Positions 1,336 through 24,166 of a stretch of 64,000 nucleotides of DNA are shown here, piece by piece. A program made the translations under genes and the position numbers. The notes beneath the pieces were generated by a model. It did no database searches. It saw only the letters and a list, made by a program, of their open reading frames with translations, and was not told the origin of the DNA. Numbering within the stretch: the first letter of the stretch is position 1; the number at the start of each line of letters is the position of its first letter. The stretch lies in the IMG/VR virus record IMGVR_UViG_3300023184_000026, positions 186,001 through 250,000 of that record. One strand, given 5' to 3'.

Positions 1336-1457
1336 CTTTAATAATGACAGAAATTTATAAAAAGTCGAGAACAATCAGCCATGTGTGTGCCAACCAACAT
1401 CACTTTTTTCAACGATTGTTCTCGCTTTTTCTATAAAAAGTAGTCAGTGTTGGCAGC

Positions 1458-2051
1458 ATGAATTCACGAGAAACCGCCATGCTGCACTTTGCGCAGGTCT
1501 ACACCGGACAGCCGTTCACTGGCACGCAGGTTGAACGTGAGCTTATCATGATGATGCTCACCAACAGCCAAGGCAGCGTTGGGCTTGAAGAGGCACTTTG
1601 TGGCATCTTGAACCTCCAGCAAACGGTATCAAAGCATGGGTTTGACGCCATTGACACCGCGACCAACGTGCGATATGAACTCAAGCCAACCATGCAGCAC
1701 AAGCCCACGGCACGCTACAATGACGTGACGCCAAAGAAGATTCATGAGATGAATCAATGTGAGAACATTGTGGTGTTTGAAGCTCATTGTGACGGAAGAA
1801 TGATTTTTCTTGCCAAAGTGAATGGAAAGCATGTTGCAACATTGCTGCAAGAAAAATTCATTGCTCGCCAGAAATCAATTGAAGCTAACAAAAACAAAGG
1901 CACTCGCCAAAGCCACGGCATTTATTTGAACGAGATTGTTGAACGATTTGGAAAAAATTCTGTTGATGTTGTTTACTATTTTCCAAATAACAAGTTTCAC
2001 AGAAAAACCAAGCAATTACTTGAATTGAAAGATGCAATAAACAATCTTTGA
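1458..2051 (+). CDS. putative PD-(D/E)XK restriction-endonuclease-like nuclease
   Basis: HGFDAID...RYELK motif; early promoter 35 nt upstream. Confidence 0.5.
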   Translation: MNSRETAMLHFAQVYTGQPFTGTQVERELIMMMLTNSQGSVGLEEALCGILNLQQTVSKHGFDAIDTATNVRYELKPTMQHKPTARYNDVTPKKIHEMNQCENIVVFEAHCDGRMIFLAKVNGKHVATLLQEKFIARQKSIEANKNKGTRQSHGIYLNEIVERFGKNSVDVVYYFPNNKFHRKTKQLLELKDAINNL

Positions 2052-2092
2052 GCATTGACATTTTATAAAAAATCAATCAAGCTTTAGCCAAC

Positions 2093-2365
2093 ATGAAGAC
2101 CACATACAGCACCGTGATATTTTGTTCATCTAGTTTCAAATGGGCAGACAATTCATCTGGCACTTGTAAAAAAAGTGAGTTGATTACAACTGGCTTCCCT
2201 CTTGGCAATAAGCATATGGCTGGTGAATACAAGGGCGTGTTTATCAAAAGCATCAAGACTGGTGTTGTGAAATACTTTGAACCAGTTCACGATGAAGATG
2301 GTTATGACGGTGAATTTATGATCTATAAAAATGAAGATATTTTTATCAGTATTTGGAATTATTGA
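2093..2365 (+). CDS. hypothetical early protein
   Basis: ORF behind promoter copy at 2056. Confidence 0.75.
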   Translation: MKTTYSTVIFCSSSFKWADNSSGTCKKSELITTGFPLGNKHMAGEYKGVFIKSIKTGVVKYFEPVHDEDGYDGEFMIYKNEDIFISIWNY

Positions 2366-2404
2366 CTGGACATTCTATAAAAAGTAAAATACTCTGTTTT
2401 AATT

Positions 2405-2680
2405 ATGAAATATGTAGCCAAAGACATCTATGCATTGGAGCGTGCTGACATTGAATTGTCTTACAATGGCAAGAAAATGGACACTGAACCAACTGACGGT
2501 TATACCAGTACAATGGACTGCATACTGAGTATGCAAAGGCTTGTTAAAATGCTGGACATTGATTGCGAAAAAATTACTGCCGTTTTGATCATCAATCGTG
2601 AAACTACGTTTGTAACCAATCTGAAAGAACTAAGTGCAGTTGTTGACAATTGGCTTCCAAATGATCCTTATTGTTCGTGA
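2405..2680 (+). CDS. hypothetical early protein
   Basis: ORF between near-identical promoter copies at ~2367 and ~2695. Confidence 0.75.
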   Translation: MKYVAKDIYALERADIELSYNGKKMDTEPTDGYTSTMDCILSMQRLVKMLDIDCEKITAVLIINRETTFVTNLKELSAVVDNWLPNDPYCS

Positions 2681-2722
2681 AACTGATTTTGTGCTGGACA
2701 TTCTATAAAAAGTAAACCATAC

Positions 2723-3385
2723 TCATTTCACAAACCTGCCATCTTTTCCACGGGGACATTTACTGGTTAGTCCTCTCCACCATCCAGTCGGAATTTCTTT
2801 TGATTTTTCGTATTTTTTATTAGAAATTCCATCTGTTATCCAACAGCTTCCTAATAGCCACGTGCGAGTTTTTTCTATACTTTCAGCCGACATTGTTTTA
2901 CCCAAATGCATTTTTCTATGATGTTCCTTACGTTCTTCGCTCCATATGGTGCCAGATGCATACGTGTTACCAATCAGTGAATTGGATATTTTATTTCTTG
3001 ATTTGATTGTATGATATCGCCCCTCCATCGGGCCGTTGGCTGGAATTGCTATGTTATACCCTCTCACTATTGAATTGTAAAATTCAACCCAGTGAATTTC
3101 TTTTGAAGTTAAAAGTTCTTTTATTGGCTCACACTCTTCCAAAATTACTTTATCAAAATTATCATATCCATACTTCTTCAAAGCATTATATAATTTTGTC
3201 TGTGCCTTGCACTCATGACGTTTGTATCTTCCCCATCTTGTATAAATATTATCGGCACTTTGTCCGATATACCATTTTCCGTTAGTTTTGTTTCTTAGAC
3301 CGTAGATACCGCAACATTTGGCGTTTGAGGATTTTTTCTTTATTTCGTTCGTAGTATCGTTTTGATTTTGTTCGGTTGTTTGCAT
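2723..3385 (-). CDS. GIY-YIG homing endonuclease with NUMOD3-like repeats
   Basis: GIYGLRNKTNGKWYIGQS, LYNALKKYGYDNF, GYN; C-terminal basic helical repeats and WITDG; start uncertain (nearest in-frame ATG 3385). Confidence 0.9.
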   Translation of the reverse strand: MQTTEQNQNDTTNEIKKKSSNAKCCGIYGLRNKTNGKWYIGQSADNIYTRWGRYKRHECKAQTKLYNALKKYGYDNFDKVILEECEPIKELLTSKEIHWVEFYNSIVRGYNIAIPANGPMEGRYHTIKSRNKISNSLIGNTYASGTIWSEERKEHHRKMHLGKTMSAESIEKTRTWLLGSCWITDGISNKKYEKSKEIPTGWWRGLTSKCPRGKDGRFVK

Positions 3386-3425
3386 CAATTTCTTCTTTCG
3401 TAGTGTATATTTTTTTTCTTCCCAT
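3282..3425 (-). CDS. 47-aa basic protein overlapping the GIY-YIG 5' end in another frame
   Basis: MGRKKIYTTKEEIDANNRTKSKRYYERNKEKILKRQMLRYLRSKKQN; directly after TATTTATTGAT; paralogue at 22530-22703. Confidence 0.7.
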   Translation of the reverse strand: MGRKKIYTTKEEIDANNRTKSKRYYERNKEKILKRQMLRYLRSKKQN

Positions 3426-3524
3426 ATCAATAAATATAGAGGTGAGAGAATAAAAGTGAGAGAAATCGTCATTATTTTTCGTTTTTTTCTGGACTTTTTA
3501 TAAAAACCGTTCATAGTTCTATTC

Positions 3525-4931
3525 ATGACCATTGATACCACGCAATTGATCGGCCCGCAGCCCGACCATGTAAAACGCCTCGTTGATTCTATTTACATCA
3601 ACGGGTTCGCTCTTGACATGAGCGAGACTGGGACTGGTAAGAGTTATTGTGCGGCGGCAGTTGCGAGGGAACTGGGTTGCGATGCCACTCGTCCGCTGGT
3701 GCTCATTGCACCAAAACCGATTTTACCACAATGGGCCAAGATCTTGTCCAGCTTCAATCTCAAGCCATATGTTGCCATCAACTATGAAAAGCTTGGGCGT
3801 GGCAACACCAAATATATGAAGTGGAAGAAACAGAAGTGCATATTGAAGCCATGGGTTGAAAATGCCGTCATGGATGCTCCGGAATTCAATTTGCCCAAGG
3901 ATGCATTGGTCATTCTGGACGAAGGACACAAATGCAAAGGCAATCATAGCACGAATTCATGGATGATGATCATGCTCAAGGAACAGGGCTATAAGGTGCT
4001 TGTGGCGTCTGCTACGCTTGCCACTACGCCAATGGAACTCAAGGCTGCTGGCTATTTGGCAGATCTGCACAGTCTGCATAACTTTGACCACTTTCTGCGT
4101 CAGCATGGTGCGGAGTGGGTTGGTCGGTTTGGTGCCATGTCGTGGGATGCTGCGTCTGTTGCTGCCAAACACAGCATGATGTTGCTCAATGAATATTTCT
4201 TTGACACTCGCAGATGCGCATCGCGTTTGACTGTGGACGACTTTGGTACATTGTTTCCAGAGTCTCATATTGTGGCAGAAGCTTATGACCTTGGAACTGC
4301 CACTGGTAAAATCAATGATATCTATGATGACATGGAAGCTGAAATTGCCAAGTTGGATGAACGTGCTGGCAATTATAGCGAACATATCTTTGCTATCATG
4401 ATGGAAGCTCGTCGTCGTTCTGAACTGTTGAAGGTTCCTTTCTTTGTTGATACCATGGAGGATCTTTATGATGAAGGCAAGAGTGTAGTATTGTTTGTGA
4501 ACTTTCAAGACACTGTTGATGCTATTGTAAAGCGTCTGGAGAAGATGAAGAAGTTCAAGGACACTATTGGATATATTGTTGGCGGGCAACATCATAAAAC
4601 TCGTCAGAAAGATATTGAAGACTTCAATGCTGACAAAAAACGCATCATGGTTGTGAACATCAAGGCTGGAGGCGTAGGCATCAGTCTGCATGACCTCAAC
4701 GGCAATCACGCACGTGCCAGCATCATCAGCCCCAACTTCAGTGCGTTTGAGCTGGTGCAGGCTTTGGGGCGTGTATGGCGTCAGGGTGGCAAGACCAAGT
4801 CGTTTCAGAATATTGTGTATGCAGCTGGCACAATTGAAGAAAAAGCTTGTCATCGCGTTCAGTTTAGAATGAACAACTTGAGCACGCTCAATGATGCTGA
4901 TTTGCGAGAAGGCATCAAAATGTTTGGTTAA
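3525..4931 (+). CDS. superfamily 2 (SNF2-like) helicase/ATPase
   Basis: Walker A ETGTGKS, DEGH box, SAT motif III, GGVGISL, QALGRVWRQG motif VI. Confidence 0.9.
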   Translation: MTIDTTQLIGPQPDHVKRLVDSIYINGFALDMSETGTGKSYCAAAVARELGCDATRPLVLIAPKPILPQWAKILSSFNLKPYVAINYEKLGRGNTKYMKWKKQKCILKPWVENAVMDAPEFNLPKDALVILDEGHKCKGNHSTNSWMMIMLKEQGYKVLVASATLATTPMELKAAGYLADLHSLHNFDHFLRQHGAEWVGRFGAMSWDAASVAAKHSMMLLNEYFFDTRRCASRLTVDDFGTLFPESHIVAEAYDLGTATGKINDIYDDMEAEIAKLDERAGNYSEHIFAIMMEARRRSELLKVPFFVDTMEDLYDEGKSVVLFVNFQDTVDAIVKRLEKMKKFKDTIGYIVGGQHHKTRQKDIEDFNADKKRIMVVNIKAGGVGISLHDLNGNHARASIISPNFSAFELVQALGRVWRQGGKTKSFQNIVYAAGTIEEKACHRVQFRMNNLSTLNDADLREGIKMFG

Positions 4932-4939
4932 GTGAAATT

Positions 4940-4976
4940 GAGTCGGGTTGAGTGGTATCAACCCGACTCTTTTTTT
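4940..4976 (+). terminator. intrinsic terminator
   Basis: GAGTCGGGTTGA-loop-TCAACCCGACTC plus T7. Confidence 0.85.
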
Positions 4977-5022
4977 ATTCTTTCTGCTCGACTTTTTATA
5001 AACTGCTGTCATTGTTATGAGC

Positions 5023-5241
5023 ATGACGCTACAACAAATCAAAGACGCGGTTGAGGCTGGTAAGACGGTGCATTGGGCAACCACGGCATACACGGTCCTC
5101 AAAGACCCGCTGCGTGACGGTACGTTTCAATGGCTCATCGGCTGTGACCACGGACGATACAACCCGAGCTATATCGGGCTGACTTGGATGGACGGCGTGA
5201 CCGTGAATGGTCGCCCCGAAGAATTCTTCATCGGCAAGTGA
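5023..5241 (+). CDS. hypothetical early protein
   Basis: ATG 35 nt after promoter copy at 4988. Confidence 0.75.
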   Translation: MTLQQIKDAVEAGKTVHWATTAYTVLKDPLRDGTFQWLIGCDHGRYNPSYIGLTWMDGVTVNGRPEEFFIGK

Positions 5242-5287
5242 GTTTGATCTCGACTTTTTATATTTTATAAACCATAATATCAGCACG

Positions 5288-5458
5288 ATGAAAAACTACA
5301 AAATCAACGTCACGGTTCAACTGACAGTCGCCGCTGATAATGAGGATGCTCTCAACCAGCTGCTGCATGAGATGGATTACACGTTCACCAGCATTTTGCC
5401 GCGGCGCAAGATCGTGGACGCTAAGTTCACTGATATGCTAGTTGTATCGGAATATTAA
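5288..5458 (+). CDS. small acidic protein, DpnD/PcfM-like pattern
   Basis: MKNYKINVTVQLTVAADNEDA; start re-assigned from promoter spacing. Confidence 0.6.
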   Translation: MKNYKINVTVQLTVAADNEDALNQLLHEMDYTFTSILPRRKIVDAKFTDMLVVSEY

Positions 5459-5542
5459 TAGCTTACAAGATAGGGCGATATCACATAGTATCTATCATTA
5501 TTTTCTCGACTTTTTATATTTCATCAACCATACTTCTATTAT

Positions 5543-5845
5543 ATGAACGCTACATTTACCAAACACGATGATCCTTGTCATGGCTGGCTTGAAGTTCAAG
5601 AAAGTGATATCAAGGAACTTGGCGCAACTGTTAATGATTTTTCAGGATACTCTTATCGCAAAGGCAATCGACTGTTTCTTGAAGAAGATTGCGATGCTAG
5701 CAAGTTTTTTACTCTTTACAAAAACAAGCATGGTGTTTATCCAAACTATGTATCTGAACATCATGATGGTGATTTTCCAGAAGACTATGATCTTGTTTCT
5801 ATTCACCATATTCGCTTTGTGAAAATCACACCCATTGCGGTCTGA
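5543..5845 (+). CDS. conserved-looking phage hypothetical protein
   Basis: DPCHGWLEV...SGYSY...LEEDCD pattern; own promoter. Confidence 0.75.
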   Translation: MNATFTKHDDPCHGWLEVQESDIKELGATVNDFSGYSYRKGNRLFLEEDCDASKFFTLYKNKHGVYPNYVSEHHDGDFPEDYDLVSIHHIRFVKITPIAV

Positions 5846-5886
5846 TTGTATTTGACTTTTTATAAAATCTAATCATACTCTATTTT

Positions 5887-6063
5887 ATGGCTAAATACTC
5901 TGTTACTATTCAATTTGAACGCACTCAAACTATCTTAGTCGAAGCTGACTCTAAAGACGAGGCTATTGAACTGGTGAGTTTCGGCCAGTTTGACGATGAG
6001 CAAATCACCGACACCGAAGATGAAAACGTTGAAATCCTCGGCGCAAGTCTTGACAAATCTTAA
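5887..6063 (+). CDS. 58-aa DpnD/PcfM-like protein (below ORF-track cutoff)
   Basis: MAKYSVTIQFERTQTILVEADSKDEAIELV...; promoter at 5852. Confidence 0.7.
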   Translation: MAKYSVTIQFERTQTILVEADSKDEAIELVSFGQFDDEQITDTEDENVEILGASLDKS

Positions 6064-6077
6064 TCAATATATTATTT

Positions 6078-6272
6078 ATGACTTATAAACGACTGATTGA
6101 AAAATTGCAACTGCTTCCACCTGAGCGTCTAAATGACACTGTGACGGTTTGGAACGCTTGGAATGACGAATTCACTCCTGTCTGTGGCGTTACAGAGAAC
6201 AAAGAAGGTAGTGAAATTCTTGACACAAATGTTCTTGACTATGGACATTTTGTGCTTGAACTGAAAAACTAA
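6078..6272 (+). CDS. hypothetical protein
   Basis: ORF in gene run. Confidence 0.7.
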   Translation: MTYKRLIEKLQLLPPERLNDTVTVWNAWNDEFTPVCGVTENKEGSEILDTNVLDYGHFVLELKN

Positions 6273-6282
6273 ATCTTGACTT

Positions 6283-6489
6283 ATGAATAACAACAATAAT
6301 AATAAACGCGAATTTTTTAGTGACAGCAAGGGCCGCTGGGTGGGCTCTGTTGTGAATGAAGGCAACGGCAAAAAGACATATTCTGATAGCAAGGGTGCTG
6401 TTGTTGGACGTGTGCATGACAACAAGACATTTGATTCAAAGGGTAGTTTCTTTGGCAAAGGAGATATGGGTCAAAGATTGTTCAAGTAG
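6283..6489 (+). CDS. small beta-repeat protein (3x DSKG)
   Basis: FSDSKGRWVG / YSDSKGAVVG / FDSKGSFFG. Confidence 0.65.
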   Translation: MNNNNNNKREFFSDSKGRWVGSVVNEGNGKKTYSDSKGAVVGRVHDNKTFDSKGSFFGKGDMGQRLFK

Positions 6490-6529
6490 TTCTTGCTTTT
6501 TATAAAAACTCTGCTAGATTATATATCAC

Positions 6530-6799
6530 ATGCCAAACACTGAAATTGTAAAAATTCTGATTGTGAATACTGGAGCAACTCCAGTTTCAACTGAAAAGAC
6601 TGAGTTTAGTGCAACTGATGCAACTGCACTACAACAGTTTATTCTGGACGCTATCAATCGTACAGGTAAACAAAGTCATGCATTGCTCAAATATAAAGAT
6701 AAGTTTTGGGTTGCTGATCATACTGCACGCAAGGGTCACAGCAAAGAATACCACAAGCATGCCGTCAAATATCATCCATACATGAAGGAGTTGGCATAA
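6530..6799 (+). CDS. hypothetical early protein
   Basis: Own promoter at 6493. Confidence 0.7.
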   Translation: MPNTEIVKILIVNTGATPVSTEKTEFSATDATALQQFILDAINRTGKQSHALLKYKDKFWVADHTARKGHSKEYHKHAVKYHPYMKELA

Positions 6800-6802
6800 A
6801 AT

Positions 6803-6997
6803 ATGTACACTATCTACGGCGAACGATACAAAAATTATGAACCTATTGTTGATGCAAAAACTAAAGAAGTGCTTGACAATGGTGAACCAAAAACAATAAA
6901 ATTGGGAACTTGGGATAATAAAAAAATTGCAGACAACATGGCAGAAAATATCAAAAACACCGTGCCACACAGAAGTTGGAAAATTTGGGTAGAATAA
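6803..6997 (+). CDS. hypothetical protein
   Basis: Starts 3 nt after upstream stop. Confidence 0.65.
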   Translation: MYTIYGERYKNYEPIVDAKTKEVLDNGEPKTIKLGTWDNKKIADNMAENIKNTVPHRSWKIWVE

Positions 6998-7033
6998 GCT
7001 GGACTTTTTATAAAAACTAATCATACTCCTTTT

Positions 7034-7231
7034 ATGCCGAAATATTCTGTTATCGTCCAATCCCTACGCACCGAAACTATTGAAATTGACGCTGAAAACA
7101 AAGCTGCGGCTGTTGCGCTTGTGAAAGAAGGTTGCGGCGAAAAACTACCTCAATCTTTGAGCGAACAAATTCACTTCGCAGAAACAGAAGGTGATTATTT
7201 TGAAATTCTTTCCGTAGTCTTGGTAAAATAA
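7034..7231 (+). CDS. DpnD/PcfM-like small protein
   Basis: MPKYSVIVQSLRTETIEIDAENKAAAVALV; paralogue of 5887-6063. Confidence 0.7.
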   Translation: MPKYSVIVQSLRTETIEIDAENKAAAVALVKEGCGEKLPQSLSEQIHFAETEGDYFEILSVVLVK

Positions 7232-7279
7232 ACAAAAATAAGCTGGACTTTTTATAAAAACTAACCATACTAACAGACG

Positions 7280-7612
7280 ATGAATATTAAACCACTAAGC
7301 AAGAAAATCTATGACAAAGCCGTTTCTCTGGGTATCATCCAGATTATACTTAAATTCTCTGGAGGCAACGACGAAGGGTATTTGACTGTGTATGTTAATA
7401 CACAAGACGGGTTTGAGAGCAACACCGAGTTTGAACAAGAAATTGAAGGTTGGGCTTGGGAAGCGTATGGTTATAGCGGTGCTGGCGACGGCAACGACTA
7501 TGGCGACGACATTGTGTATGACCTATTGAACAAAACCGCAACGGCTAGTTCATGGTCTATGCAACGCACCGAAGGATACTCTGAGGATGCTGCGTTGGAA
7601 ATTGCTGAATAA
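7280..7612 (+). CDS. DUF6878-like acidic protein
   Basis: FSGGNDEG motif, GAGDGNDYG. Confidence 0.65.
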   Translation: MNIKPLSKKIYDKAVSLGIIQIILKFSGGNDEGYLTVYVNTQDGFESNTEFEQEIEGWAWEAYGYSGAGDGNDYGDDIVYDLLNKTATASSWSMQRTEGYSEDAALEIAE

Positions 7613-7620
7613 AACTCAAA

Positions 7621-16955: not shown

Positions 16956-16990
16956 TTGACTTTTATAAAAACTCTGACATAGTTCTAAAC

Positions 16991-17812: not shown

Positions 17813-18058
17813 ATGAAAGCATCCATTCTTCCCAACGACATTTCTGTTGTTTACTCATATCGTCCAGATGTTGCTCGTGAATATCTAACCATTGATGTTC
17901 CAAATGGTTGGGACGATGTCAAGAAGATCAGCAAAAAAGTGTTGAGCTATGATGGTCGCAAATTTACTTTTACTGGTTGGAACAGCGACAGCAATCAATG
18001 CTATTTTGCTCGCAGCTTGCATGAAACAATTGCGCCAATCGCAACTTTTGTGAAATAA
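17813..18058 (+). CDS. hypothetical early protein
   Basis: Start from promoter 17778 spacing. Confidence 0.7.
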   Translation: MKASILPNDISVVYSYRPDVAREYLTIDVPNGWDDVKKISKKVLSYDGRKFTFTGWNSDSNQCYFARSLHETIAPIATFVK

Positions 18059-18096
18059 GTGTTGCTTTTTATAAAAATTCTGTCACTGTTTTAAGT

Positions 18097-18291
18097 ATGA
18101 ACTCCTCCATCACCTTCACCGAAAAGGGTCTGTTTCTGCTCGCCGTCACTGCTCTGGAGCTTGACAGCACGCCCCAATACAGTGTTGATTATGACAATAT
18201 GACAATCAACACCGATGATGTTGATTATCTCGTGGATCTGCTGCATGAGCAGGGTGTTTTTGAGTTTATCTGTATATCGCGGCGATGCTGA
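18097..18291 (+). CDS. hypothetical early protein
   Basis: Promoter 18062. Confidence 0.65.
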   Translation: MNSSITFTEKGLFLLAVTALELDSTPQYSVDYDNMTINTDDVDYLVDLLHEQGVFEFICISRRC

Positions 18292-18406
18292 TGGCGATCA
18301 TGACCAGTTTCGCACGGATGCTGAGGCTGATGCCGACGCTCTTGCGTCTGCGGGTATGGGAGATGACGAAAGCTATGGTTATTACGGCGGCGGGGAGGAC
18401 GAGTAA
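18272..18406 (+). pseudogene. orphan 3' fragment of an acidic phage gene
   Basis: GDADGDHDQFRTDAEADADALASAGMGDDESYGYYGG, out of frame with the upstream ORF and lacking an ATG/promoter. Confidence 0.45.
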
Positions 18407-18407
18407 C

Positions 18408-18599
18408 ATGTATCTTGTAGGCGACAGATTATCATTTCCTCATAACTGTGCAACAAGCACAGGCACTGTTGCAGTTATTCATGAAAATCAAAATATGTCA
18501 TTGACATATTGGATTGATGAAGACAATGGTGAAAATGTGCTGCTTTTTGATGATGCTATAAATGTGTCACTCATTGAGCCAGAATTTCTTGACTTTTGA
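18408..18599 (+). CDS. hypothetical protein
   Basis: ATG 1 nt after stop of preceding fragment. Confidence 0.6.
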   Translation: MYLVGDRLSFPHNCATSTGTVAVIHENQNMSLTYWIDEDNGENVLLFDDAINVSLIEPEFLDF

Positions 18600-18688
18600 T
18601 TTTTCGTTGGGTTCATAAGAAAAGAGGAGGCATAAAAAACCTCCCCTTTTAGCTTGCTTTTTATAAAAACTCTGTCATTGTTTTAAGT

Positions 18689-18913
18689 ATGAACTTCAAC
18701 ACCGCATATCTCCTCGCCAACCAAGTTGCCCGAAAAGAAAAAGTGTCAATGATAGTTGTGCTGGAAGGCATTCATCGCGACGAACGCGCGCCAGAAGACA
18801 GCCACGGCTTTTGCCCAGCAAGCGCAGTTTCTATGCTGTATCGCTTCGGCAAGGTTGTTGCTATGATTCCGGCAGGAGGCACGCGGGTATCCGCCGCCAA
18901 ACTAAATAAATAA
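18689..18913 (+). CDS. hypothetical early protein
   Basis: Promoter 18654. Confidence 0.7.
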   Translation: MNFNTAYLLANQVARKEKVSMIVVLEGIHRDERAPEDSHGFCPASAVSMLYRFGKVVAMIPAGGTRVSAAKLNK

Positions 18914-18956
18914 AATAAGAGTTGCTTTTTATAAAAATTCTGATATTGTTTTAAGT

Positions 18957-19190
18957 ATGAACTTCAGCACTCACCAAATAGAAATCCTCAACGCTGCTGG
19001 CTACAACTTTCGTTGGAACAAATACACATCGGAATTTGTTTGCAACAAAAACGCAGAGGTTGGAATTTACAGTCACACTAGCGACAGTTTTGTTGCCAGA
19101 ATTCTTGACTGGGATCGTGAGACTGGCAACGAATTTTTTGTTTATCATTATTTCAAGACGTTTCAAGAAATGAAATCATTTCTGACATAA
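18957..19190 (+). CDS. hypothetical early protein
   Basis: Promoter 18922. Confidence 0.7.
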   Translation: MNFSTHQIEILNAAGYNFRWNKYTSEFVCNKNAEVGIYSHTSDSFVARILDWDRETGNEFFVYHYFKTFQEMKSFLT

Positions 19191-19194
19191 TTTT

Positions 19195-19413
19195 ATGAAT
19201 AATAATTTTACACGAATTTATTCAGCATCTGGCAAAGAAATTTTTCCCAGAGCTGGTCTTTGTTTGAACGCTGGAACCATTGTTCAAAAAAATAGTGGTT
19301 TTGTTACATTGGTCAAGTCTGCCACAATTCAAGCAAATAAAGTTACTGTGCTTGGAGATGGTCAGGGCAGAGACAAAAAAGAAATCTCTTTCTCACTGGT
19401 TGAATCAGTTTGA
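19195..19413 (+). CDS. hypothetical protein
   Basis: Stop TGA inside next TTGACT. Confidence 0.65.
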   Translation: MNNNFTRIYSASGKEIFPRAGLCLNAGTIVQKNSGFVTLVKSATIQANKVTVLGDGQGRDKKEISFSLVESV

Positions 19414-19444
19414 CTTTTATAAAAAGTCCGATATTGTTTTAAGC

Positions 19445-19627
19445 ATGATATCACCAAAAGTTGATGTAAAACCAATTGACTTCCACGGGGAAGCATATTA
19501 CACCGTCTTCATTGACGGCGAAGAGATGACCGGAGCCTATTGTGGTCTCCTGCCCGTCAAGCATCGTAACGATGCTTGGGAGGTTTCCGAAGAAATTCTG
19601 AGCGACATGAACGTTGTTGATGATTGA
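19445..19627 (+). CDS. hypothetical early protein flanked by identical promoter copies
   Basis: AGTTTGACTTTTATAAAAAGTCCGATATTGTTTTAAG on both sides. Confidence 0.7.
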   Translation: MISPKVDVKPIDFHGEAYYTVFIDGEEMTGAYCGLLPVKHRNDAWEVSEEILSDMNVVDD

Positions 19628-19664
19628 GTTTGACTTTTATAAAAAGTCCGATATTGTTTTAAGT

Positions 19665-19928
19665 ATGAACCTCACCAAAGCAGATTTTCAAAACGACTTG
19701 AACAAAGCAACTGCTATGGGTGCAGCCGCTTTTAAACGTGGCATCTTGTGTGCTTGTGCATCTGATGTTGAGTTTAGTTATTTCATCAAGAAATACAGCA
19801 CAGCTGATTGGAAATTTACCAAGCAACTGTTGAAGCTCATGGATGCTTGGCAGCGTGGTTATACGGTTGAATTCAATTCAATTATTGCCACTTGGGAAGC
19901 TGAACTATCATCTAAAAATTTAAAATAA
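19665..19928 (+). CDS. hypothetical early protein
   Basis: Promoter 19630. Confidence 0.7.
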   Translation: MNLTKADFQNDLNKATAMGAAAFKRGILCACASDVEFSYFIKKYSTADWKFTKQLLKLMDAWQRGYTVEFNSIIATWEAELSSKNLK

Positions 19929-19966
19929 GTCTCGCTTTTTATAAAAATTCTGTCACTATCTTATTT

Positions 19967-20125
19967 ATGAACTCTAAATCAATTATCACTGGCGTTGAAA
20001 TCGGCAACATTGTGTTTGAGCTGGACGAAGCTTGTGCTGCTACGAGACTAACCGAAGACGAGCATAAGTTCGCAGTTGATGCAGTTGTTGCTGCTTGGAA
20101 AGCTCAACTATCATCCAAAAAATAA
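19967..20125 (+). CDS. 52-aa hypothetical early protein
   Basis: MNSKSIITGVEIG...AAWKAQLSSKK; promoter 19932. Confidence 0.65.
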   Translation: MNSKSIITGVEIGNIVFELDEACAATRLTEDEHKFAVDAVVAAWKAQLSSKK

Positions 20126-20169
20126 AAATAAGTCTCGACATTCATAAAAACTCTGGCATTATCTATAAT

Positions 20170-20391
20170 ATGAACTCTTGGAAAACTGAAGTTTGCACAA
20201 TGTATCAAGGCAGCGAATCTTGGGCGACCAATTCTTTGCGATTTGCTTCAAAGATTGAAGCTGAAAAAGCTGGGCATGAATTGCTTTCTCGTTGGTATGT
20301 TCCAATCAAAAGTCGTGCTGCACAATCAGAAGATGCAGTGAATTATGTTTTTGATGACGCCACTGGCCGTCCAGCACCAATATCTGTTTGA
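20170..20391 (+). CDS. hypothetical early protein
   Basis: WATNSLRFA...ELLSRW; promoter 20134. Confidence 0.7.
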   Translation: MNSWKTEVCTMYQGSESWATNSLRFASKIEAEKAGHELLSRWYVPIKSRAAQSEDAVNYVFDDATGRPAPISV

Positions 20392-20418
20392 CATTTATAA
20401 AACAATTAATATAATCTT

Positions 20419-20616
20419 ATGTCATATATATCTTTAATCACCGCATTTTTTATTATCTGGAGTTTGTTTGGACTGTGTGTGCTATTCAATCTTGAAGCTG
20501 GCAGCAAACCGTCACTTCGTTTGGCTATTGTGATTGGTCCAATCATCATGATTTTTGGACTTGTTATTATTGGCTGTTTGTTGCTGATTGAAAAAACAAC
20601 AGAATGGACAAAATAG
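20419..20616 (+). CDS. small two-TM membrane protein
   Basis: Two hydrophobic stretches. Confidence 0.65.
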   Translation: MSYISLITAFFIIWSLFGLCVLFNLEAGSKPSLRLAIVIGPIIMIFGLVIIGCLLLIEKTTEWTK

Positions 20617-20653
20617 TCTTGATTTTTATAAAAACTCTGGCATAGTTAGTGTC

Positions 20654-20785
20654 ATGAAGATCAACAACACAATCAAACTTCGCAGCGTGTTCAGCTCTGG
20701 CATGAATCTGGGCAATCAGATTCACAAGACCCGCAAGGGCAAAGGCAGTTATTCTCGCAAAAATCGCAACAACAAGTGGCAGTAA
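20654..20785 (+). CDS. ArfA-like small basic protein
   Basis: HKTRKGKGSYSRK matches the KGKGSY-RK signature of alternative ribosome-rescue factor A; promoter 20619. Confidence 0.55.
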   Translation: MKINNTIKLRSVFSSGMNLGNQIHKTRKGKGSYSRKNRNNKWQ

Positions 20786-20828
20786 AAATAGAGTTGCTTT
20801 TTATAAAAAAATAGTCAGTATCTATAAT

Positions 20829-21116
20829 ATGAAAACCGTAGATGATCGCAATGAATCTCAGAAAATCACCCACAAGTGGGCAATCGTTGCCAAGGACAAG
20901 TATATGAGCGGCTGGGGTGGAGCAACAGGTGGAGCCAGCCGTGTGGCGTGGGCTGTGGAATCATATGCTAGTGTTGACAAGCTATTGAGCTGGGTCAAGT
21001 CGCGAAATGAAATGAAATATGTTAATGTCGTAAATTTGAATGATTATCGTGCTCCACGCAGCACAGCACACTTTCATGTTTATGTTGCAAATGCCAGTCA
21101 TCCTGCGTTTGACTAA
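20829..21116 (+). CDS. conserved-looking phage hypothetical protein
   Basis: DKYMSGWGGA...RNEMKYV. Confidence 0.75.
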   Translation: MKTVDDRNESQKITHKWAIVAKDKYMSGWGGATGGASRVAWAVESYASVDKLLSWVKSRNEMKYVNVVNLNDYRAPRSTAHFHVYVANASHPAFD

Positions 21117-21160
21117 AAAATAGAGTTGCTTTTTATAAAAACTCTGTCAGTATTCTAAAC

Positions 21161-21577
21161 ATGAAGATCACCAAGCACACCACAATTGCTCTGACAATCA
21201 GCGAGATCAAGCAAAGTCTGTCTGACTATCAATCCGAGATCATGCATGAAATGCTGCTTGAGTATTTCAATCTTCCATATAATTCTGACAAATTTTGTGG
21301 ATTGTCATATGACGAAAAACAAAAACTTATGGAATGGTCCAATTTGCTTGTGAAAGGCACTCATAGTGAGGAGTTTAATAAACTCAGCAATGGTCGTTGG
21401 ATTCATACGCCATCATTTAACAGCGGATTTGTTGAATTGGTTGAATCTTTTCCACATATGTTCTTGACAGTGGATTTGTTTGATGGTCTAGATGCCAAGG
21501 ATTTTAGCGTTAAAATTGTGCATAACAATGGCGATGAGACATTCGTCAACAGTGAAAATATTCTCAGCAACATTTGA
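21161..21577 (+). CDS. hypothetical early protein
   Basis: Promoter 21126. Confidence 0.7.
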   Translation: MKITKHTTIALTISEIKQSLSDYQSEIMHEMLLEYFNLPYNSDKFCGLSYDEKQKLMEWSNLLVKGTHSEEFNKLSNGRWIHTPSFNSGFVELVESFPHMFLTVDLFDGLDAKDFSVKIVHNNGDETFVNSENILSNI

Positions 21578-21620
21578 TTATTATCTCGACTTTTTATAAA
21601 AACCAGTCATAGTTTACAAC

Positions 21621-21974
21621 ATGAACTCTATCTTTTCTCCTGATCTGGTAAACAAGCCCACGGTGGTATATGGTCCACAGGTTGGCGACATATTGGTCAG
21701 CATATCTGGCTATGAGGCCAGCATTGCTAGTTGGGCCAAGGTTGTGGGTGTGACTGGCAAGAGCGTCAAGATTGTGCGCTTGCCCGCCGACAACAAATAC
21801 ACTGGCGGCGGTGGCATGGAATGGATCAGCACGCCTGCCACGGACCGCATCAAGGGCGAGACCGAAACGAAACGTTTTACTGCTGATGGCGACGGCTATA
21901 GGGTCAAGAACAACAGCTACAGCAACTATTATGTTTGGAGTGGCAAGCCAATTGAGTGCTACAACTGGCATTGA
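21621..21974 (+). CDS. hypothetical early protein
   Basis: VGDILVSISGYE...VVGVTGKSV; promoter 21586. Confidence 0.75.
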   Translation: MNSIFSPDLVNKPTVVYGPQVGDILVSISGYEASIASWAKVVGVTGKSVKIVRLPADNKYTGGGGMEWISTPATDRIKGETETKRFTADGDGYRVKNNSYSNYYVWSGKPIECYNWH

Positions 21975-22663
21975 TCTTTCAAGAAATGGCGTTTCATTGC
22001 CTCTGAGAGAGCAACCCTGTTGCTCTCATCAGAGTAATGTTTGAACAGTGCGTCGGATATTTTCTTGTTGCGTTCCTTACTGAATGTGCGACCTTTCATC
22101 CTTTCTGACATTTTTAGTCTTTCTTCTTCGGCAATGACCCTTCCACATTTTTTATTCTGCTCAGGGGTTCTTCGCTTCCGTGCATCGCTTAGTGCTTTTC
22201 TGTGAGCATCACTAAATTTTTTTCCTTTTTTTGCCGCACTTATATTTTTTCGATGTTCCGGACTGTTAGTGGCTCCTGATCTAAGGTCTCCACCATAACC
22301 GCCATCCGTTAGATTATATCCATTGTTCTTTGAGTCATAATACTTTATCCACACTATTTCTTTATTGCTGAGTTCATCTTTGTCGCATTCTTCCAGTATT
22401 ACTTTGTTGAAATTGTTTATTCCATATTTTTTGAGGGCTCGATAGATTTTAGGCTGAGTTTTACAACTTACATTATCGTATGCAGTTTTCCACCTATCGT
22501 GGATATCAACACTCAGTCCGATATACCATTTATGTGGTTTGAGTTTGTTCTGTAGTCCGTATATTCCTATCTTTTTTGACATGGTATCGGTTACGAGCAT
22601 TTTCTCTTTCTCTGTTGACATTTTTCCAGTAACTTCGCATTCTGTAAATTCTGTTGAGTTCAT
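21959..22663 (-). CDS. GIY-YIG homing endonuclease with NUMOD3-like repeats
   Basis: GIYGLQNK...WYIGLS, RALKKYG, GYNLTDGG, SPEHRKNISAAKKG; likely start ATG 22582 (MSKKIGIY). Confidence 0.9.
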   Translation of the reverse strand: MNSTEFTECEVTGKMSTEKEKMLVTDTMSKKIGIYGLQNKLKPHKWYIGLSVDIHDRWKTAYDNVSCKTQPKIYRALKKYGINNFNKVILEECDKDELSNKEIVWIKYYDSKNNGYNLTDGGYGGDLRSGATNSPEHRKNISAAKKGKKFSDAHRKALSDARKRRTPEQNKKCGRVIAEEERLKMSERMKGRTFSKERNKKISDALFKHYSDESNRVALSEAMKRHFLKDQCQL

Positions 22664-22703
22664 CGAGGTGTTCCTTTGTTCGGTTTAGTTTTTTTCTTCC
22701 CAT
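22530..22703 (-). CDS. 57-aa basic protein overlapping the GIY-YIG 5' end in another frame
   Basis: MGRKKLNRTKEHLDELNRIYRMRSYWKNVNRERENARNRYHVKK...; after TATTTATTGAT. Confidence 0.7.
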   Translation of the reverse strand: MGRKKLNRTKEHLDELNRIYRMRSYWKNVNRERENARNRYHVKKDRNIRTTEQTQTT

Positions 22704-22775
22704 ATCAATAAATAGTATTTACTTACAAAAAACCTTACAAAATTAGTTTTTATTTTAGGTTGAGTGTTCATAGTT

Positions 22776-22810
22776 GAGGGAGCAGCGTGGTGGCTGCTCC
22801 CTCTTTTTTT
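22776..22810 (+). terminator. intrinsic terminator
   Basis: GAGGGAGCAGC-loop-GCTGCTCCCTC plus T7. Confidence 0.85.
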
Positions 22811-22855
22811 ACTTTGCCGCTTGACTTTTATAATAAATAAATCATTATCTTAAAT

Positions 22856-23074
22856 ATGAAATTTGTTATCTTCTGCAATGCCGCCAATTTGAAAACCTAC
22901 AACAACACTTGGATTGTTGTAGCTGCCAACACATCATATAAAGTGTTGAACATTCAATTTGATGAATATGGCATCATACGTTCAATTGTTTTTTCTGTGA
23001 GCAATGACATTGTTGCTTTTGAACGCAGCAATATTACTGGAAAATTTGGCAGCAATTTTGCTTTGAGTGCTTGA
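22856..23074 (+). CDS. hypothetical early protein
   Basis: Promoter 22821. Confidence 0.65.
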   Translation: MKFVIFCNAANLKTYNNTWIVVAANTSYKVLNIQFDEYGIIRSIVFSVSNDIVAFERSNITGKFGSNFALSA

Positions 23075-23106
23075 CATTTTATAATAAGTAAGTCAGTATT
23101 TATAAC

Positions 23107-23322
23107 ATGAAATCCAAGAAACTTACCAAGACATACTTTGAACTCTACACGATTGGTGCCACAAGTGGTTGGGGAGAATATGACGATGAAACCTTGGACA
23201 CCACACTCAAAACACTCAAATCTGCTATGAAAGAAGCAAAAATTCTGGCAGATGAAGGTCAAACTGTCAAGATCAAGCAGGTCAAAGAATTGCTGTTTAT
23301 CAAAGGTGAAAAGGCTGCTTGA
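23107..23322 (+). CDS. hypothetical early protein
   Basis: Promoter 23071. Confidence 0.7.
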   Translation: MKSKKLTKTYFELYTIGATSGWGEYDDETLDTTLKTLKSAMKEAKILADEGQTVKIKQVKELLFIKGEKAA

Positions 23323-23353
23323 CTTTTATAAAAACTCTGACACTATCTATAAC

Positions 23354-23677
23354 ATGAACCTCGTTAATAACAAAGAAATCAAGTTCAAGAACGGTCTGGT
23401 TATTCCTGTTGGCACAAACCTAAATGTAAATTTTAAGATTGGTGGCACTGTGTGCGAACTGTCTGGTGGCAGTGCTGGCGGCGTTCCTGTGACCATGAAG
23501 CTGCGTTGCTCTAGTCTGCCACGCTACTTCACCAAGTTCAAGGCTCCTTCGCTCAAGACCATGGAAAAGTGGAGCAACGATGGTGTTGCCAAGTCAATGC
23601 TTGGTCAGGTAGTTGAGCCAGACGGCTATGACAGCGAAGGCAGTCCAAGTTGGATGCTGGTCGCGGGCATTATCTAA
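23354..23677 (+). CDS. hypothetical early protein
   Basis: PSLKTMEKW...VEPDG...PSWML; promoter 23319. Confidence 0.75.
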   Translation: MNLVNNKEIKFKNGLVIPVGTNLNVNFKIGGTVCELSGGSAGGVPVTMKLRCSSLPRYFTKFKAPSLKTMEKWSNDGVAKSMLGQVVEPDGYDSEGSPSWMLVAGII

Positions 23678-23686
23678 ATAAAAAAC

Positions 23687-23827
23687 ATGAAAATCACCTA
23701 CACTTACAGAGGCTGGTATGTATTTTACTATAACAGCAAATATGTTGCACAACATGCATATGCAACATCATATGAAGCAGACACACAAGAACAGTTGCTG
23801 AACACCATCGACGAGTTCATGAAATAA
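23687..23827 (+). CDS. 46-aa hypothetical protein
   Basis: MKITYTYRGWYVFY...; followed by terminator-like hairpin 23831-23858. Confidence 0.55.
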   Translation: MKITYTYRGWYVFYYNSKYVAQHAYATSYEADTQEQLLNTIDEFMK

Positions 23828-23893
23828 AACAAAAGGAGGAAATAACCTCCTTTTTTTTATTGCAATTTATAATAAATGTGCTAGAGTATCTGA

Positions 23894-24166
23894 ATGATGA
23901 ACACCACTGCCTCGTTCGCCGCTCGTGTCGCCGCCTTTCACGCCGCCAATGCGGTCGCAGCCGCCAATGCCAAGTACGCCGACTATCGTGTGTACCGCAC
24001 AGAGGGCGACCGCCGTGTCCTCACGGTTGAGGTGTCGTTTCCCAACGACGTTCGCAATGCCAACTTCGGCGACGTATGCTTCTACGACGCTGCCACCGAC
24101 ACCTTTCGTGACAGCACGGAGGTTGATGTGGCTGGTACCACGTTCTATGTTGAGCGGGTGGCGTGA
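23894..24166 (+). CDS. hypothetical early protein, GC-rich
   Basis: Promoter ~23859; last gene of the array. Confidence 0.7.
   Translation: MMNTTASFAARVAAFHAANAVAAANAKYADYRVYRTEGDRRVLTVEVSFPNDVRNANFGDVCFYDAATDTFRDSTEVDVAGTTFYVERVA

What the first reader, a model, noticed from the sequence alone, without database searches (positions are those of the whole stretch)
1423..24166. Array of ~45-50 one-gene cassettes, each with its own promoter repeat and a leaderless start
Seen: most genes in 1.4-24.2 kb are preceded by a -35-like hexamer (TTGACT/TTGCTT/TCGACT/TGGACT), a ~16-bp spacer, YAnnnT and 7 nt, placing the ATG 35 nt after the -35 (e.g. 3490/3525, 5852/5887, 15307/15342, 18654/18689, 21126/21161, 23319/23354). 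There is no room for a Shine-Dalgarno sequence. Inference: transcription starts at the ATG, so the whole early programme is leaderless, and each [promoter+ORF] unit is autonomous and order-independent. Leaderless initiation on 70S ribosomes could escape or exploit host translation shut-off. The spacing also corrects many ORF-track starts and reveals sub-60-aa genes.
Basis: partly seen in the sequence, partly recalled or inferred. Interest (0 to 1): 0.8.

Follow-up and report, generated by a model that had tools for sequence, protein, structure and literature searches.

The report
Leaderless promoter-gene cassettes, jumbo phage
A 23-kb stretch of an uncultured freshwater giant phage holds about 46 copies of one bacterial-type promoter, 36 of them placed so that transcription should begin at the ATG of a small gene, and related phages gain, lose and swap genes at these promoter copies.

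Summary
Between 1160 and 23860 the + strand carries 46 copies of one promoter-like repeat: -35 TTGACT/TTGCTT/TCGACT/TGGACT, a 16-bp (sometimes 17-bp) spacer with a palindromic TTTATAAAA box and often TGn, then a CAnnnT or TAGAGT -10. In 36 copies an ATG opening an ORF of at least 43 codons lies 6-9 nt after the -10, and exactly 7 nt after it in 25. The strict pattern occurs 27 times against 1.05 expected. Other copies precede tRNA genes, two CA-rich leaders and one structured non-coding RNA, so the repeats are promoters, not translation signals.

The spacing is kept in ~50% GC relatives that carry mostly unrelated genes (17 of 17). That makes leaderless mRNAs the best reading, but no transcription start was mapped. 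The metatranscriptome contigs break inside the repeats.

"Autonomous" is only partly right. There are almost no terminators, gene order is largely conserved, and about 14 genes have no promoter of their own. Cassette gain and loss does happen inside the repeats.

The closest known system is the PeSL cassettes of T4-type phages, but these repeats have no stem-loop and no Shine-Dalgarno sequence. Late genes also lack Shine-Dalgarno sequences, which weakens the shut-off-escape idea. The host is unknown. I rate it a new variant of a known kind.

The parts
1160..24166 (+). Whole early-type module: 46 promoter copies, about 50 small protein genes, 5 tRNA genes, one structured RNA
1333..1368 (-). Single promoter copy on the minus strand (TCGACT-16-CATTAT). 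It points left, converges with the 1160 copy over a GC-rich stretch, and is conserved in L025
1422..2680 (+). Three cassettes: -35 at 1422, 2055, 2367; ATG at 1458, 2093, 2405; gaps of 7, 9, 9 nt
2695..2723 (+). Orphan promoter copy. In L025 and L026 the equivalent copy drives the helicase gene directly
2723..3541 (-). GIY-YIG homing endonuclease gene inserted between two promoter copies
3490..4931 (+). Helicase cassette (468 aa), ATG at 3525, 7 nt after CATAGT. The homologue in L025 keeps a 6-nt gap
4940..4969 (+). One of the few strong intrinsic terminators (12-pair stem followed by a T run)
4988..5845 (+). Three cassettes: -35 at 4988, 5250, 5506; ATG at 5023, 5288, 5543. The last two lack the exact TTTATAAAA box but keep the -35, the spacing and the -10
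5852..8013 (+). Cassettes with -35 at 5852, 6493, 7000, 7244, plus ORFs without a full promoter at 6078, 6283, 6803, 7621
8281..8437 (+). Promoter copy (TTGACA-16-TATAGT), tRNA with CAT anticodon at 8329-8399, then a terminator at 8408-8437
8439..9487 (+). Cassettes with -35 at 8439 and 8670, plus a downstream ORF at 9260
10926..12153 (+). tRNA block. Promoter copies at 10926, 11403 and 11777 precede tRNAs. The copy at 11059 is a leaderless cassette (ATG 11096) followed by tRNA-Ile. tRNAs supported by Rfam lie at 10976, 11321, 11464 and 12082
12590..14300 (+). Cassettes with -35 at 12590 and 13040 (Fn3-domain protein), plus ORFs at 12831 and 13695 (DUF3293, weak SAM-lyase match)
14297..14655 (+). 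Promoter copy followed by about 330 nt with no ORF that folds far better than shuffles
14662..15296 (+). Cassette with an atypical -10 region, ATG at 14697 (199 aa)
15307..16163 (+). Three tightly packed cassettes: -35 at 15307, 15689, 15899. The third is absent from L022, L008 and one RNA contig, with the junction inside the repeat
16166..17719 (+). Copies at 16166 and 17362 carry 27-nt and 32-nt CA-rich leaders (ATG 16221 and 17423). A leaderless cassette lies at 16956 (ATG 16991). The ORF at 16530 has no promoter
17778..21974 (+). Densest run. Leaderless cassettes with -35 at 17778, 18062, 18654, 18922, 19410, 19630, 19932, 20135, 20619, 20794, 21126, 21586, all with a 7-nt gap. A consensus copy at 20388 has its ATG only 3 nt after the -10
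21959..22663 (-). Second GIY-YIG/NUMOD3 homing endonuclease gene. L003 has a different segment at this place
22821..24166 (+). Last four cassettes: -35 at 22821, 23071, 23319, 23860. At 23071 and 23319 the upstream gene's TGA stop lies inside the -35 hexamer
24150..24300 (+). G-run and C-run hairpins that close the module
26783..27007 (+).

Best explanation
This is the early, hyperplastic gene module of an uncultured freshwater myovirus-like jumbo phage with a 297-kb contig. Host RNA polymerase with its primary sigma factor is predicted to recognise about 46 copies of a ~45-bp promoter. The promoter has a -35 TTGACT/TTGCTT, an invariant 16-17 bp spacer holding a TTTATAAAA palindrome and often an extended -10 TGn, and a -10 CAnnnT or TAGAGT. 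In 36 copies the A of an ATG lies 6-9 nt (mostly 7) after the -10 and is preceded by a pyrimidine. Transcription should therefore start at or within 2 nt of the ATG and give mRNAs with no leader and no ribosome-binding site. Such mRNAs would be read from their 5'-terminal AUG. The previous gene's stop codon abuts or overlaps the next -35, and there are almost no terminators. Transcripts are therefore probably nested, running on through downstream genes, so each gene is 5'-terminal on only one of them. Because the same ~45 bp recurs before every gene, homologous recombination between copies deletes, inserts and replaces whole genes. That is how related phages differ. Shown here: the repeat, its geometry, its conservation, and the breakpoints. 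Inferred: promoter activity, the start position, the mode of translation, and early timing.
For: The geometry and its excess over chance are shown. The -35 to -10 spacing stays at 16-17 bp even where the AT box shifts by one base or is degraded (5250, 5506, 8281, 11777). The same repeat precedes tRNA genes and a non-coding RNA, so it is a transcription signal. The base at -1 is a pyrimidine in 31 of 38 cassettes and all starts are ATG. No Shine-Dalgarno pairing is seen upstream: 2% of early starts reach -4.5 kcal/mol. ORFs run from the ATG to within 12 nt of the next -35 in 18 of 37 junctions. In relatives with 77% protein identity, and in ~50% GC relatives (L007, L013, L019), 17 of 17 copies keep a 6-8 nt gap with different 7-mers, and only 2 of 17 ORFs are homologous to window genes. 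Of 144 homology breakpoints among eight relative loci, 70 fall inside promoter copies, which cover 10.5% of the region. At least six indels have their junction within the repeat. RNA-library contigs show joints at the same places. Promoter similarity decays with distance (rho -0.51, permutation p below 0.0005). A -10 motif directly upstream of the ORF is the accepted signature of leaderless genes (PMC3160421, PMC12340547).
Against: No transcription start site was mapped. The RNA-library contigs come from related strains, break at the repeated words, and several span promoters, which means read-through RNA or contaminating DNA. The gap is one base longer than the textbook six. Most -10 hexamers begin with C and match TATAAT at only 2-4 positions. 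The AT box is better conserved than either hexamer, so a factor other than sigma may be involved. About 14 genes have no promoter of their own and no Shine-Dalgarno sequence, yet they must be translated internally, so leaderless initiation cannot be the only mode. The host and its ability to translate leaderless mRNA are unknown. The closest cultured relatives lack such arrays.
Confidence: 0.7

Rival explanations
1. The repeats are promoters, but most protein comes from long read-through transcripts. The ATGs would then be used as internal, Shine-Dalgarno-independent start sites, and leaderless 5' ends would be a minor by-product of tight packing.
For: Terminator-like sites are not enriched and the repeats hold no hairpin. 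RNA-library contigs cross promoters. Promoterless early genes and all late genes also lack Shine-Dalgarno sequences, so this system initiates internally without one.
Against: This does not explain why the ATG is held at 6-9 nt from the -10 in 36 window copies and 17 of 17 distant copies while the intervening bases vary. It also does not explain the pyrimidine at -1.
Confidence: 0.15
2. The real -10 element is the TATAAA inside the conserved box. Transcription would then start about 20 nt before the ATG and give short leaders without a Shine-Dalgarno sequence.
For: The box is the best-conserved part of the repeat (1.2-1.5 bits per position), and TATAAA is closer to TATAAT than CATTGT is.
Against: No conserved -35 lies 17 bp upstream of the box. 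The adjacent TTGACT would be unexplained, as would the conserved A and T of CAnnnT, the TGn, and the fixed distance to the ATG. Copies with a degraded box keep the -35, the spacing and the -10.
Confidence: 0.07
3. The host is an archaeon and the repeat is a BRE/TATA-box promoter. The TTTATAAA is centred about 25-26 nt before the ATG, the usual archaeal distance, and leaderless mRNAs are common in archaea.
For: The position of the box relative to the ATG fits. Shine-Dalgarno sequences are absent from all gene classes.
Against: The hexamer next to the box matches the bacterial -35 consensus at 5 or 6 of 6 positions in 20 copies, with TGn and A/T at the sigma-contact positions. The structural proteins are 36-44% identical to phages of Microcystis and Flavobacterium. 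An ArfA-like protein, known from bacteria, is encoded. Four of five tRNA genes encode CCA.
Confidence: 0.04
4. The repeats are chiefly mobile or recombination elements (MITE-like, or sites for a recombinase), and their resemblance to a promoter is incidental.
For: Breakpoints are enriched in the repeats and nearby copies are more alike.
Against: All but one copy have the same orientation. They always lie in front of a gene or tRNA. They have no terminal inverted repeats or target duplications, and no recombinase lies alongside. Their -35, TGn and -10 geometry is kept across lineages.
Confidence: 0.03

Closest known systems
PeSL (promoter-early stem-loop) cassettes of T4-type phages RB49, phi1, PST and nt-1 (PMC2839356, PMC4122927)
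   Same: About 50 repeated sigma-70-like promoters are concentrated in a hyperplastic region, each just upstream of a small gene of unknown function. The upstream gene's stop codon is part of the motif. Indels and replacements between close relatives have their junctions in the motif. The tail proteins here are also of the T4-like kind.
   Different: There is no stable stem-loop (mean -3.2 kcal/mol, z -0.09), so no built-in terminator. There is no Shine-Dalgarno sequence, and the start codon sits at the predicted +1 instead of after a leader. A palindromic AT box in the spacer is conserved across lineages.
Leaderless genes with a -10 motif directly upstream of the ORF, in Deinococcus-Thermus and Actinobacteria (PMC3160421, PMC12340547). 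From my own recollection, also the mostly leaderless middle and late transcripts of Thermus phage phiYS40 (Sevostyanova et al. 2007, not readable here).
   Same: A TAnnnT-like hexamer lies a few bases before an ATG, there is no ribosome-binding site, and a -35 sits at the right distance.
   Different: Here it is a phage's early-type module, not host genes or late phage genes. One highly conserved promoter is reused about 46 times. The hexamer mostly starts with C. The host is unknown and shows no sign of belonging to those phyla.
Lambda cI from PRM and other single leaderless phage genes (cited in PMC12340547 through Shean and Gottesman 1992)
   Same: The transcript begins at the AUG of the gene.
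   Different: Those are single regulatory genes, not an array of dozens.
Multi-promoter host-takeover regions of T4, T5 and SPO1 (own knowledge; T4 early promoters summarised in PMC5780444)
   Same: There are many strong sigma-70-type promoters with AT-rich spacers. TTGCTT is also the -35 of T5 PN25, by recollection. They stand in front of small early genes and tRNAs.
   Different: Those genes have leaders with Shine-Dalgarno sequences.
Integron gene cassettes
   Same: One-gene units are gained and lost at a repeated boundary sequence.
   Different: There is no integrase, no attC-type folded site and no single common promoter. Here every unit carries its own promoter, and exchange looks like ordinary homologous recombination.

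Membership tests
PeSL cassettes (T4-type phages) | Repeated sigma-70-like early promoter in front of small variable genes in a hyperplastic region | tested here: met
   46 copies between 1160 and 23860. Most downstream proteins have no Pfam or PHROG match.
PeSL cassettes (T4-type phages) | Stable stem-loop within or next to the promoter that acts as a terminator or attenuator | tested here: not met
   Folding of 43 repeats gave mean dG -3.2 kcal/mol and mean z -0.09. Only a few copies have a weak AGAGTT...AACTCT hairpin.
PeSL cassettes (T4-type phages) | Shine-Dalgarno sequence and start codon at the 3' end of the motif | tested here: not met
   The start codon lies 6-9 nt after the -10, and anti-SD pairing is absent.
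PeSL cassettes (T4-type phages) | Indels and replacements between close relatives have junctions in the motif | tested here: met
   70 of 144 breakpoints lie in repeats that cover 10.5% of the region, and six indels have overlapping alignment ends of 35-50 nt.
PeSL cassettes (T4-type phages) | Excised mini-circles formed by recombination between neighbouring motifs | not testable with these tools
   This needs reads or PCR across circular junctions. Only assembled contigs were available.
Leaderless genes (promoter -10 adjacent to the ORF) | A -10-like hexamer with A at position 2 and T at position 6, a few bases upstream of the start codon | tested here: met
   36 in-region cassettes have gaps of 6-9 nt, 25 of them exactly 7.
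Leaderless genes (promoter -10 adjacent to the ORF) | No ribosome-binding site, and an AUG start codon | tested here: met
   All 36 start with ATG, and 2% of early starts show anti-SD pairing of -4.5 kcal/mol or better.
Leaderless genes (promoter -10 adjacent to the ORF) | Primary 5' end of the mRNA mapped at, or within a few bases of, the start codon | tested here: inconclusive
   Contigs from four metatranscriptome runs were laid on 15000-20999. They end in the repeated words and carry no information on 5' ends.
Leaderless genes (promoter -10 adjacent to the ORF) | Translation from the 5'-terminal AUG | not testable with these tools
   This needs toeprinting, reporter assays or ribosome profiling.
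Integron cassette array | Integrase gene, attI site and attC recombination sites | tested here: not met
   No integrase was found among the early proteins, and the repeats do not fold.

The most novel reading that the evidence does not exclude
A whole clade of freshwater giant phages (37-51% GC) may have standardised its early genes as plug-and-play units: promoter, then AUG, then ORF, then a stop codon in the next promoter. Such units would need no leader, no ribosome-binding site and no terminator. The invariant palindromic TTTATAAAA box in the spacer would be the operator for one phage- or host-encoded protein that switches all of the roughly 46 promoters off, or on, together. Leaderless initiation, together with the encoded ArfA-like ribosome-channel protein, would be part of a take-over of the host's ribosomes.
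Probability: 0.15. Interest if true: 0.75.

Novelty: new variant of a known kind. Interest (0 to 1): 0.55.

Why it matters
If the starts are confirmed, this would be, as far as I could find, the largest set of leaderless genes driven by one promoter in a phage. It would also be a natural library of about 36 promoter-AUG fusions that differ in their -10 sequences, discriminators and coding sequences. That makes it useful for studying start-site choice and leaderless translation. It extends the PeSL idea, in which promoters serve as the recombination handles that shuffle small phage genes, to a distant phage clade and to a simpler unit. It also has a practical consequence. Standard gene callers mis-place starts here and miss genes of 43-60 aa, whereas the promoter spacing gives exact starts.

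Tried and rejected
- **Transcription start mapping.** I laid contigs from four metatranscriptome runs on 15000-20999. This gave no information. The contigs come from 90-99% identical strains, end in the repeated words and have no direction. Only one such call was allowed.
- **Nucleotide and protein searches against cultured phages.** There was no nucleotide match. Protein matches were limited to tail proteins of Microcystis phage Mel-JY01, Flavobacterium phage immuto and one uncultured 484-kb phage.
- **Arrays in cultured relatives.** I scanned all of Mel-JY01 and the first 50 kb of immuto for the same arrangement and found only background levels.
- **Host identification.** A genome-collection scan with the carbamoyltransferase found no relative. 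The protein atlas returned only viral clusters. The DUF6915 protein points mostly to actinophages, and the ArfA-like protein points to proteobacteria (my own knowledge). These hints conflict, so the host is left open.
- **Paralogy as the source of the repeat.** Only one pair of cassette proteins is related (5887 and 7034, 42% identity). The repeat is therefore the promoter, not duplicated genes.
- **Second-codon bias.** ATGAA is equally common in late genes, so it is not part of the promoter.
- **Rfam searches.** Nothing was found for the GC-rich stretch at 1190-1345 or for the RNA at 14326-14655. The stretch at 1190-1345 does not fold better than shuffles.
- **The phiYS40 paper.** It could not be read.


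Full report
**What the window is.** The window is identical to part of IMG/VR contig 3300023184_000026 (297,258 bp). Loci L004, L005 and L027 match it at 100%, and it occurs in lake and freshwater metagenomes. It has no nucleotide match among 50,697 deposited phage genomes. Its baseplate-wedge-like proteins are 36-44% identical to those of Microcystis phage Mel-JY01, an uncultured 484-kb phage and Flavobacterium phage immuto. It is therefore an uncultured myovirus-like jumbo phage. From 24.8 kb onward the window holds larger genes, including glycosyl- and carbamoyl-transferases and tail or baseplate proteins.

**The observation.**
- A structural parse, with three variants added by eye, finds 46 copies of the repeat on the + strand between 1160 and 23860. 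One more lies at 26783 and one on the minus strand at 1368.
- The repeat has a -35-like hexamer: TTGACT in 14 copies, TTGCTT in 10, TTGACA in 6, and TCGACT, TCGCTT, TGGACT or TGGACA in the rest.
- The spacer is 16 bp in 37 copies and 17 bp in 10. It begins with a palindromic TTTATAAAA box and often ends in TGn.
- The -10-like hexamer has A at position 2 and T at position 6 (CATTGT, CATACT, CATAGT, CACTAT, TAGAGT and others).
- In 36 in-region copies an ATG that opens an ORF of 43-468 codons follows after 6-9 nt: 7 nt in 25 copies, 6 in 2, 8 in 3 and 9 in 6.
- The fixed pattern occurs 27 times against 1.05 expected from dinucleotide shuffles, and no shuffle exceeded 5.
- With a looser pattern the density is 1.27 per kb here, against 0.05-0.15 per kb on the other strand and in the late region.
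- An ATG at a given site is expected in under 2% of cases, and an ORF of 50 codons from a random ATG in a few percent. The coincidence is therefore far beyond chance.
- About 36 of roughly 50 plausible + strand protein genes have the arrangement.

**The repeats are transcription signals.**
- The same repeat stands before tRNA genes at 8329, 10976 and 11464, and probably before the doubtful one at 11824.
- It also stands before two genes with 27-32 nt CA-rich leaders (16221, 17423).
- It also stands before a ~330-nt stretch with no ORF that folds with a z-score of -5.07.
- The -35 to -10 distance is held at 16-17 bp even where the AT box is shifted by one base, as in the TCGACT-TTTTATAAAA class. 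It is also held where the box is degraded, as at 5250, 5506, 8281 and 11777. This is what selection on a sigma-70-type promoter predicts.
- All but one copy point the same way, as do all the genes except three on the minus strand.

**Why leaderless is the best reading, and what is not shown.**
- The A of the ATG is the 7th to 10th base after the -10 hexamer, most often the 8th. That is inside the window in which bacterial RNA polymerase starts.
- The base before it is a pyrimidine in 31 of 38 cassettes, which fits the known preference for pyrimidine at -1 and purine at +1 (my own knowledge).
- Even a start one or two bases earlier would leave no usable leader.
- All 36 starts are ATG. Anti-Shine-Dalgarno pairing upstream is absent (2% at -4.5 kcal/mol or better).
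- A -10 motif immediately upstream of the ORF is the accepted signature of leaderless genes (PMC3160421, PMC12340547).
- The strongest support comes from comparison with relatives. In L025 and L026 (helicase 77% identical) the spacing is kept with changed sequence.
- In three ~50% GC contigs (L007, L013, L019), all 17 promoter copies have the ATG at 6-8 nt, 12 of them at 7. Their 7-mers are unrelated, and only 2 of the 17 ORFs are homologous to window genes. The distance is constrained, not the sequence or the cargo.
- No transcription start was mapped. Contigs of four metatranscriptome runs were laid on 15000-20999. They come from related strains and end inside the repeated words. Several span promoters, which means read-through RNA or contaminating DNA.

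**How autonomous the units are.**
- The stop codon of the preceding gene lies within 12 nt of the next -35 in 18 of 37 junctions. In three cases the TGA is inside the TTGAC of the -35.
- Terminator-like sites are no more frequent than in shuffles (19 against 17.3). Only three strong ones lie on the + strand, at 4940, 8408 and 9530.
- The repeats contain no stable hairpin (mean -3.2 kcal/mol, z -0.09).
- Transcripts from each promoter should therefore run on through downstream genes, giving nested sets. The units are self-starting but not insulated.
- About 14 genes have no full promoter of their own and no Shine-Dalgarno sequence (for example 6078, 6283, 6803, 7621, 9260, 12831, 13695, 16530, 18285 and 19195).
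- Late genes show no enrichment of anti-SD pairing either (13% against 13% at random positions). Their upstream regions are A/T-rich and poor in G.
- This phage-host system therefore seems to initiate without Shine-Dalgarno pairing in general. That weakens the idea that the leaderless design exists to escape a host shut-off.

**Cassette turnover.**
- Gene order among eight related loci (85-98% identical in shared parts) is largely collinear, but whole cassettes are present or absent.
- Of 144 alignment ends, 70 fall inside promoter copies, which occupy 10.5% of the region. The loci overlap in part, so these are not all independent events.
- At least six indels have alignment ends that overlap by 35-50 nt within one hybrid promoter. 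They are 15936-16163 (absent from L022 and L008), 18960-19415 (L003, L022), 18709-19635 (L008, L023), 21165-21590 (L003, L006), 7027-7237 (L025, L026), and the endonuclease insertion at 2723-3489 (absent from L025 and L026).
- L025 also has two neighbouring cassettes in the opposite order (homologues of 6078 and 5887).
- Joints in the RNA-library contigs fall at the same repeats, although these could be assembly chimeras.
- Promoter copies are more alike the closer they lie (rho -0.51, permutation p below 0.0005). That points to local duplication or gene conversion.
- Only one pair of cassette proteins is paralogous.

**Comparison with known systems.** The closest described system is the PeSL of T4-type phages. 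PeSLs are about 50 sigma-70-like promoters in hyperplastic regions. Each motif includes the upstream stop codon, and recombination between motifs produces indels and replacements (PMC2839356, PMC4122927). Two defining parts of a PeSL are missing here: the stable stem-loop terminator and the Shine-Dalgarno sequence. I therefore describe this array as working like PeSLs in genome evolution, but I do not file it as a member. On the expression side it matches the -10-adjacent-to-ORF class of leaderless genes. Literature searches found no report of a phage whose early module is built in this way. The two jumbo phages with mapped starts, AR9 and phiKZ, have leaders of 26 nt or more and no leaderless transcripts (PMC5312081, PMC8244752). 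Mel-JY01 and the first 50 kb of immuto lack such arrays.

**Rival readings.**
- Read-through with internal initiation as the main route. This is not exclusive of the best explanation and does not account for the fixed spacing.
- A -10 element inside the AT box, giving 20-nt leaders. This leaves the TTGACT, the TGn, the CAnnnT and the spacing unexplained.
- An archaeal BRE/TATA promoter. The box is centred about 25-26 nt before the ATG, but the -35 matches the bacterial consensus, the relatives infect bacteria, and an ArfA-like protein is encoded.
- A mobile element with an incidental resemblance to a promoter.

One open point remains. The AT box is better conserved than either hexamer and is kept in the 50% GC lineage. 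It may be a binding site for a regulator, or simply a strength determinant maintained by gene conversion.

**Verdict.** My confidence that these are promoters is about 0.9. It is about 0.7 that they yield leaderless mRNAs, and about 0.75 that they mediate cassette exchange. The finding is a new variant of a known kind and of moderate interest.

Noticed in passing
window 20654-20785 (and L007 1405-1548): A 43-aa cassette protein ends in KTRKGKGSYSRK. It matches Pfam ArfA (alternative ribosome-rescue factor A) over the C-terminal tail, at 24.6 bits against a cut-off of 25.5. The only PDB hits are ArfA chains. The motif is kept in close relatives, and as RGTGSYSRK in the distant relative L007. 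This may be a phage protein that binds the empty mRNA channel of ribosomes.
   Followed up: partly
window 14326-14655: About 330 nt downstream of promoter copy 14297 have no ORF and fold at -108.8 kcal/mol (z -5.07), with no Rfam match. In L022 and L008 the sequence is conserved, with one compensatory change and five one-sided compatible changes. Those loci carry an extra 84-92 nt in a linker, and the extra piece forms two hairpins of its own. This looks like an unknown structured RNA.
   Followed up: partly
window 2723-3541 and 21959-22663, minus strand: Two free-standing GIY-YIG homing endonuclease genes lie on the opposite strand. The first sits between two promoter copies and is absent from L025 and L026. 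L003 has a different segment in place of the second.
   Followed up: partly
window 24870-62400, upstream of late genes: Late genes show no Shine-Dalgarno enrichment. Their upstream regions are A/T-rich, with T at -1 in 80% and A at -2 in 67%. Many have a GTATATWT(T)TAT-like motif 13-40 nt upstream (for example before 24870, 33706, 47029, 49903 and 56197). This may be a late promoter reminiscent of the T4 TATAAATA.
   Followed up: partly
window 840-1000 and 24300-24640: Both borders of the early module are AT-rich stretches with many copies of GCTATATAC- or CATATATAC-like words. The left one follows a terminator at 813-838. Their function is unknown; they could be late promoters, an origin or protein-binding arrays.
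   Followed up: no
window 24150-24300: Runs of 10-13 G and C form very strong hairpins (-87.9 kcal/mol) right after the last cassette. This is probably the terminator of the whole module, and it may also be hard to assemble.
   Followed up: partly
window 1160-1368: A + strand promoter copy (1160, TCGACT-17-TATAAT) and the only minus-strand copy (1368) converge on a GC-rich 150-nt stretch that has no convincing ORF. The arrangement is conserved in L025. There is no Rfam hit and folding is not better than shuffles.
   Followed up: partly
window 16194-16220 and 17391-17422: The two promoter copies that do have leaders carry CA-rich, unstructured-looking leaders (CAACAACAC type) in place of a Shine-Dalgarno sequence.
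   Followed up: no
window 8329-12153: Five tRNA genes are supported by Rfam: two with CAT anticodons, plus Ile-TAT, Lys-TTT and Glu-TTC. All read A/T-rich codons, and four of the five encode their CCA end. Two further ARAGORN calls (10133 and 11824) are not supported by Rfam. The one at 10133 overlaps a 353-aa minus-strand ORF.
   Followed up: partly
window 13695-14300 and 7621-8013: 13695 encodes a DUF3293 protein with a weak match to the SAM-lyase family, so it may be an anti-restriction function. 7621 encodes a DUF6915 protein whose phage homologues are mostly in Streptomyces and Gordonia phages.
   Followed up: no
window 20388-20616: The copy closest to the sigma-70 consensus (TTGACA-16-TATAAT) has its ATG only 3 nt after the -10. 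It precedes a 65-aa predicted membrane protein, whose homologue in L003 is 21 aa longer at the N-terminus. The start of this gene is unclear.
   Followed up: no
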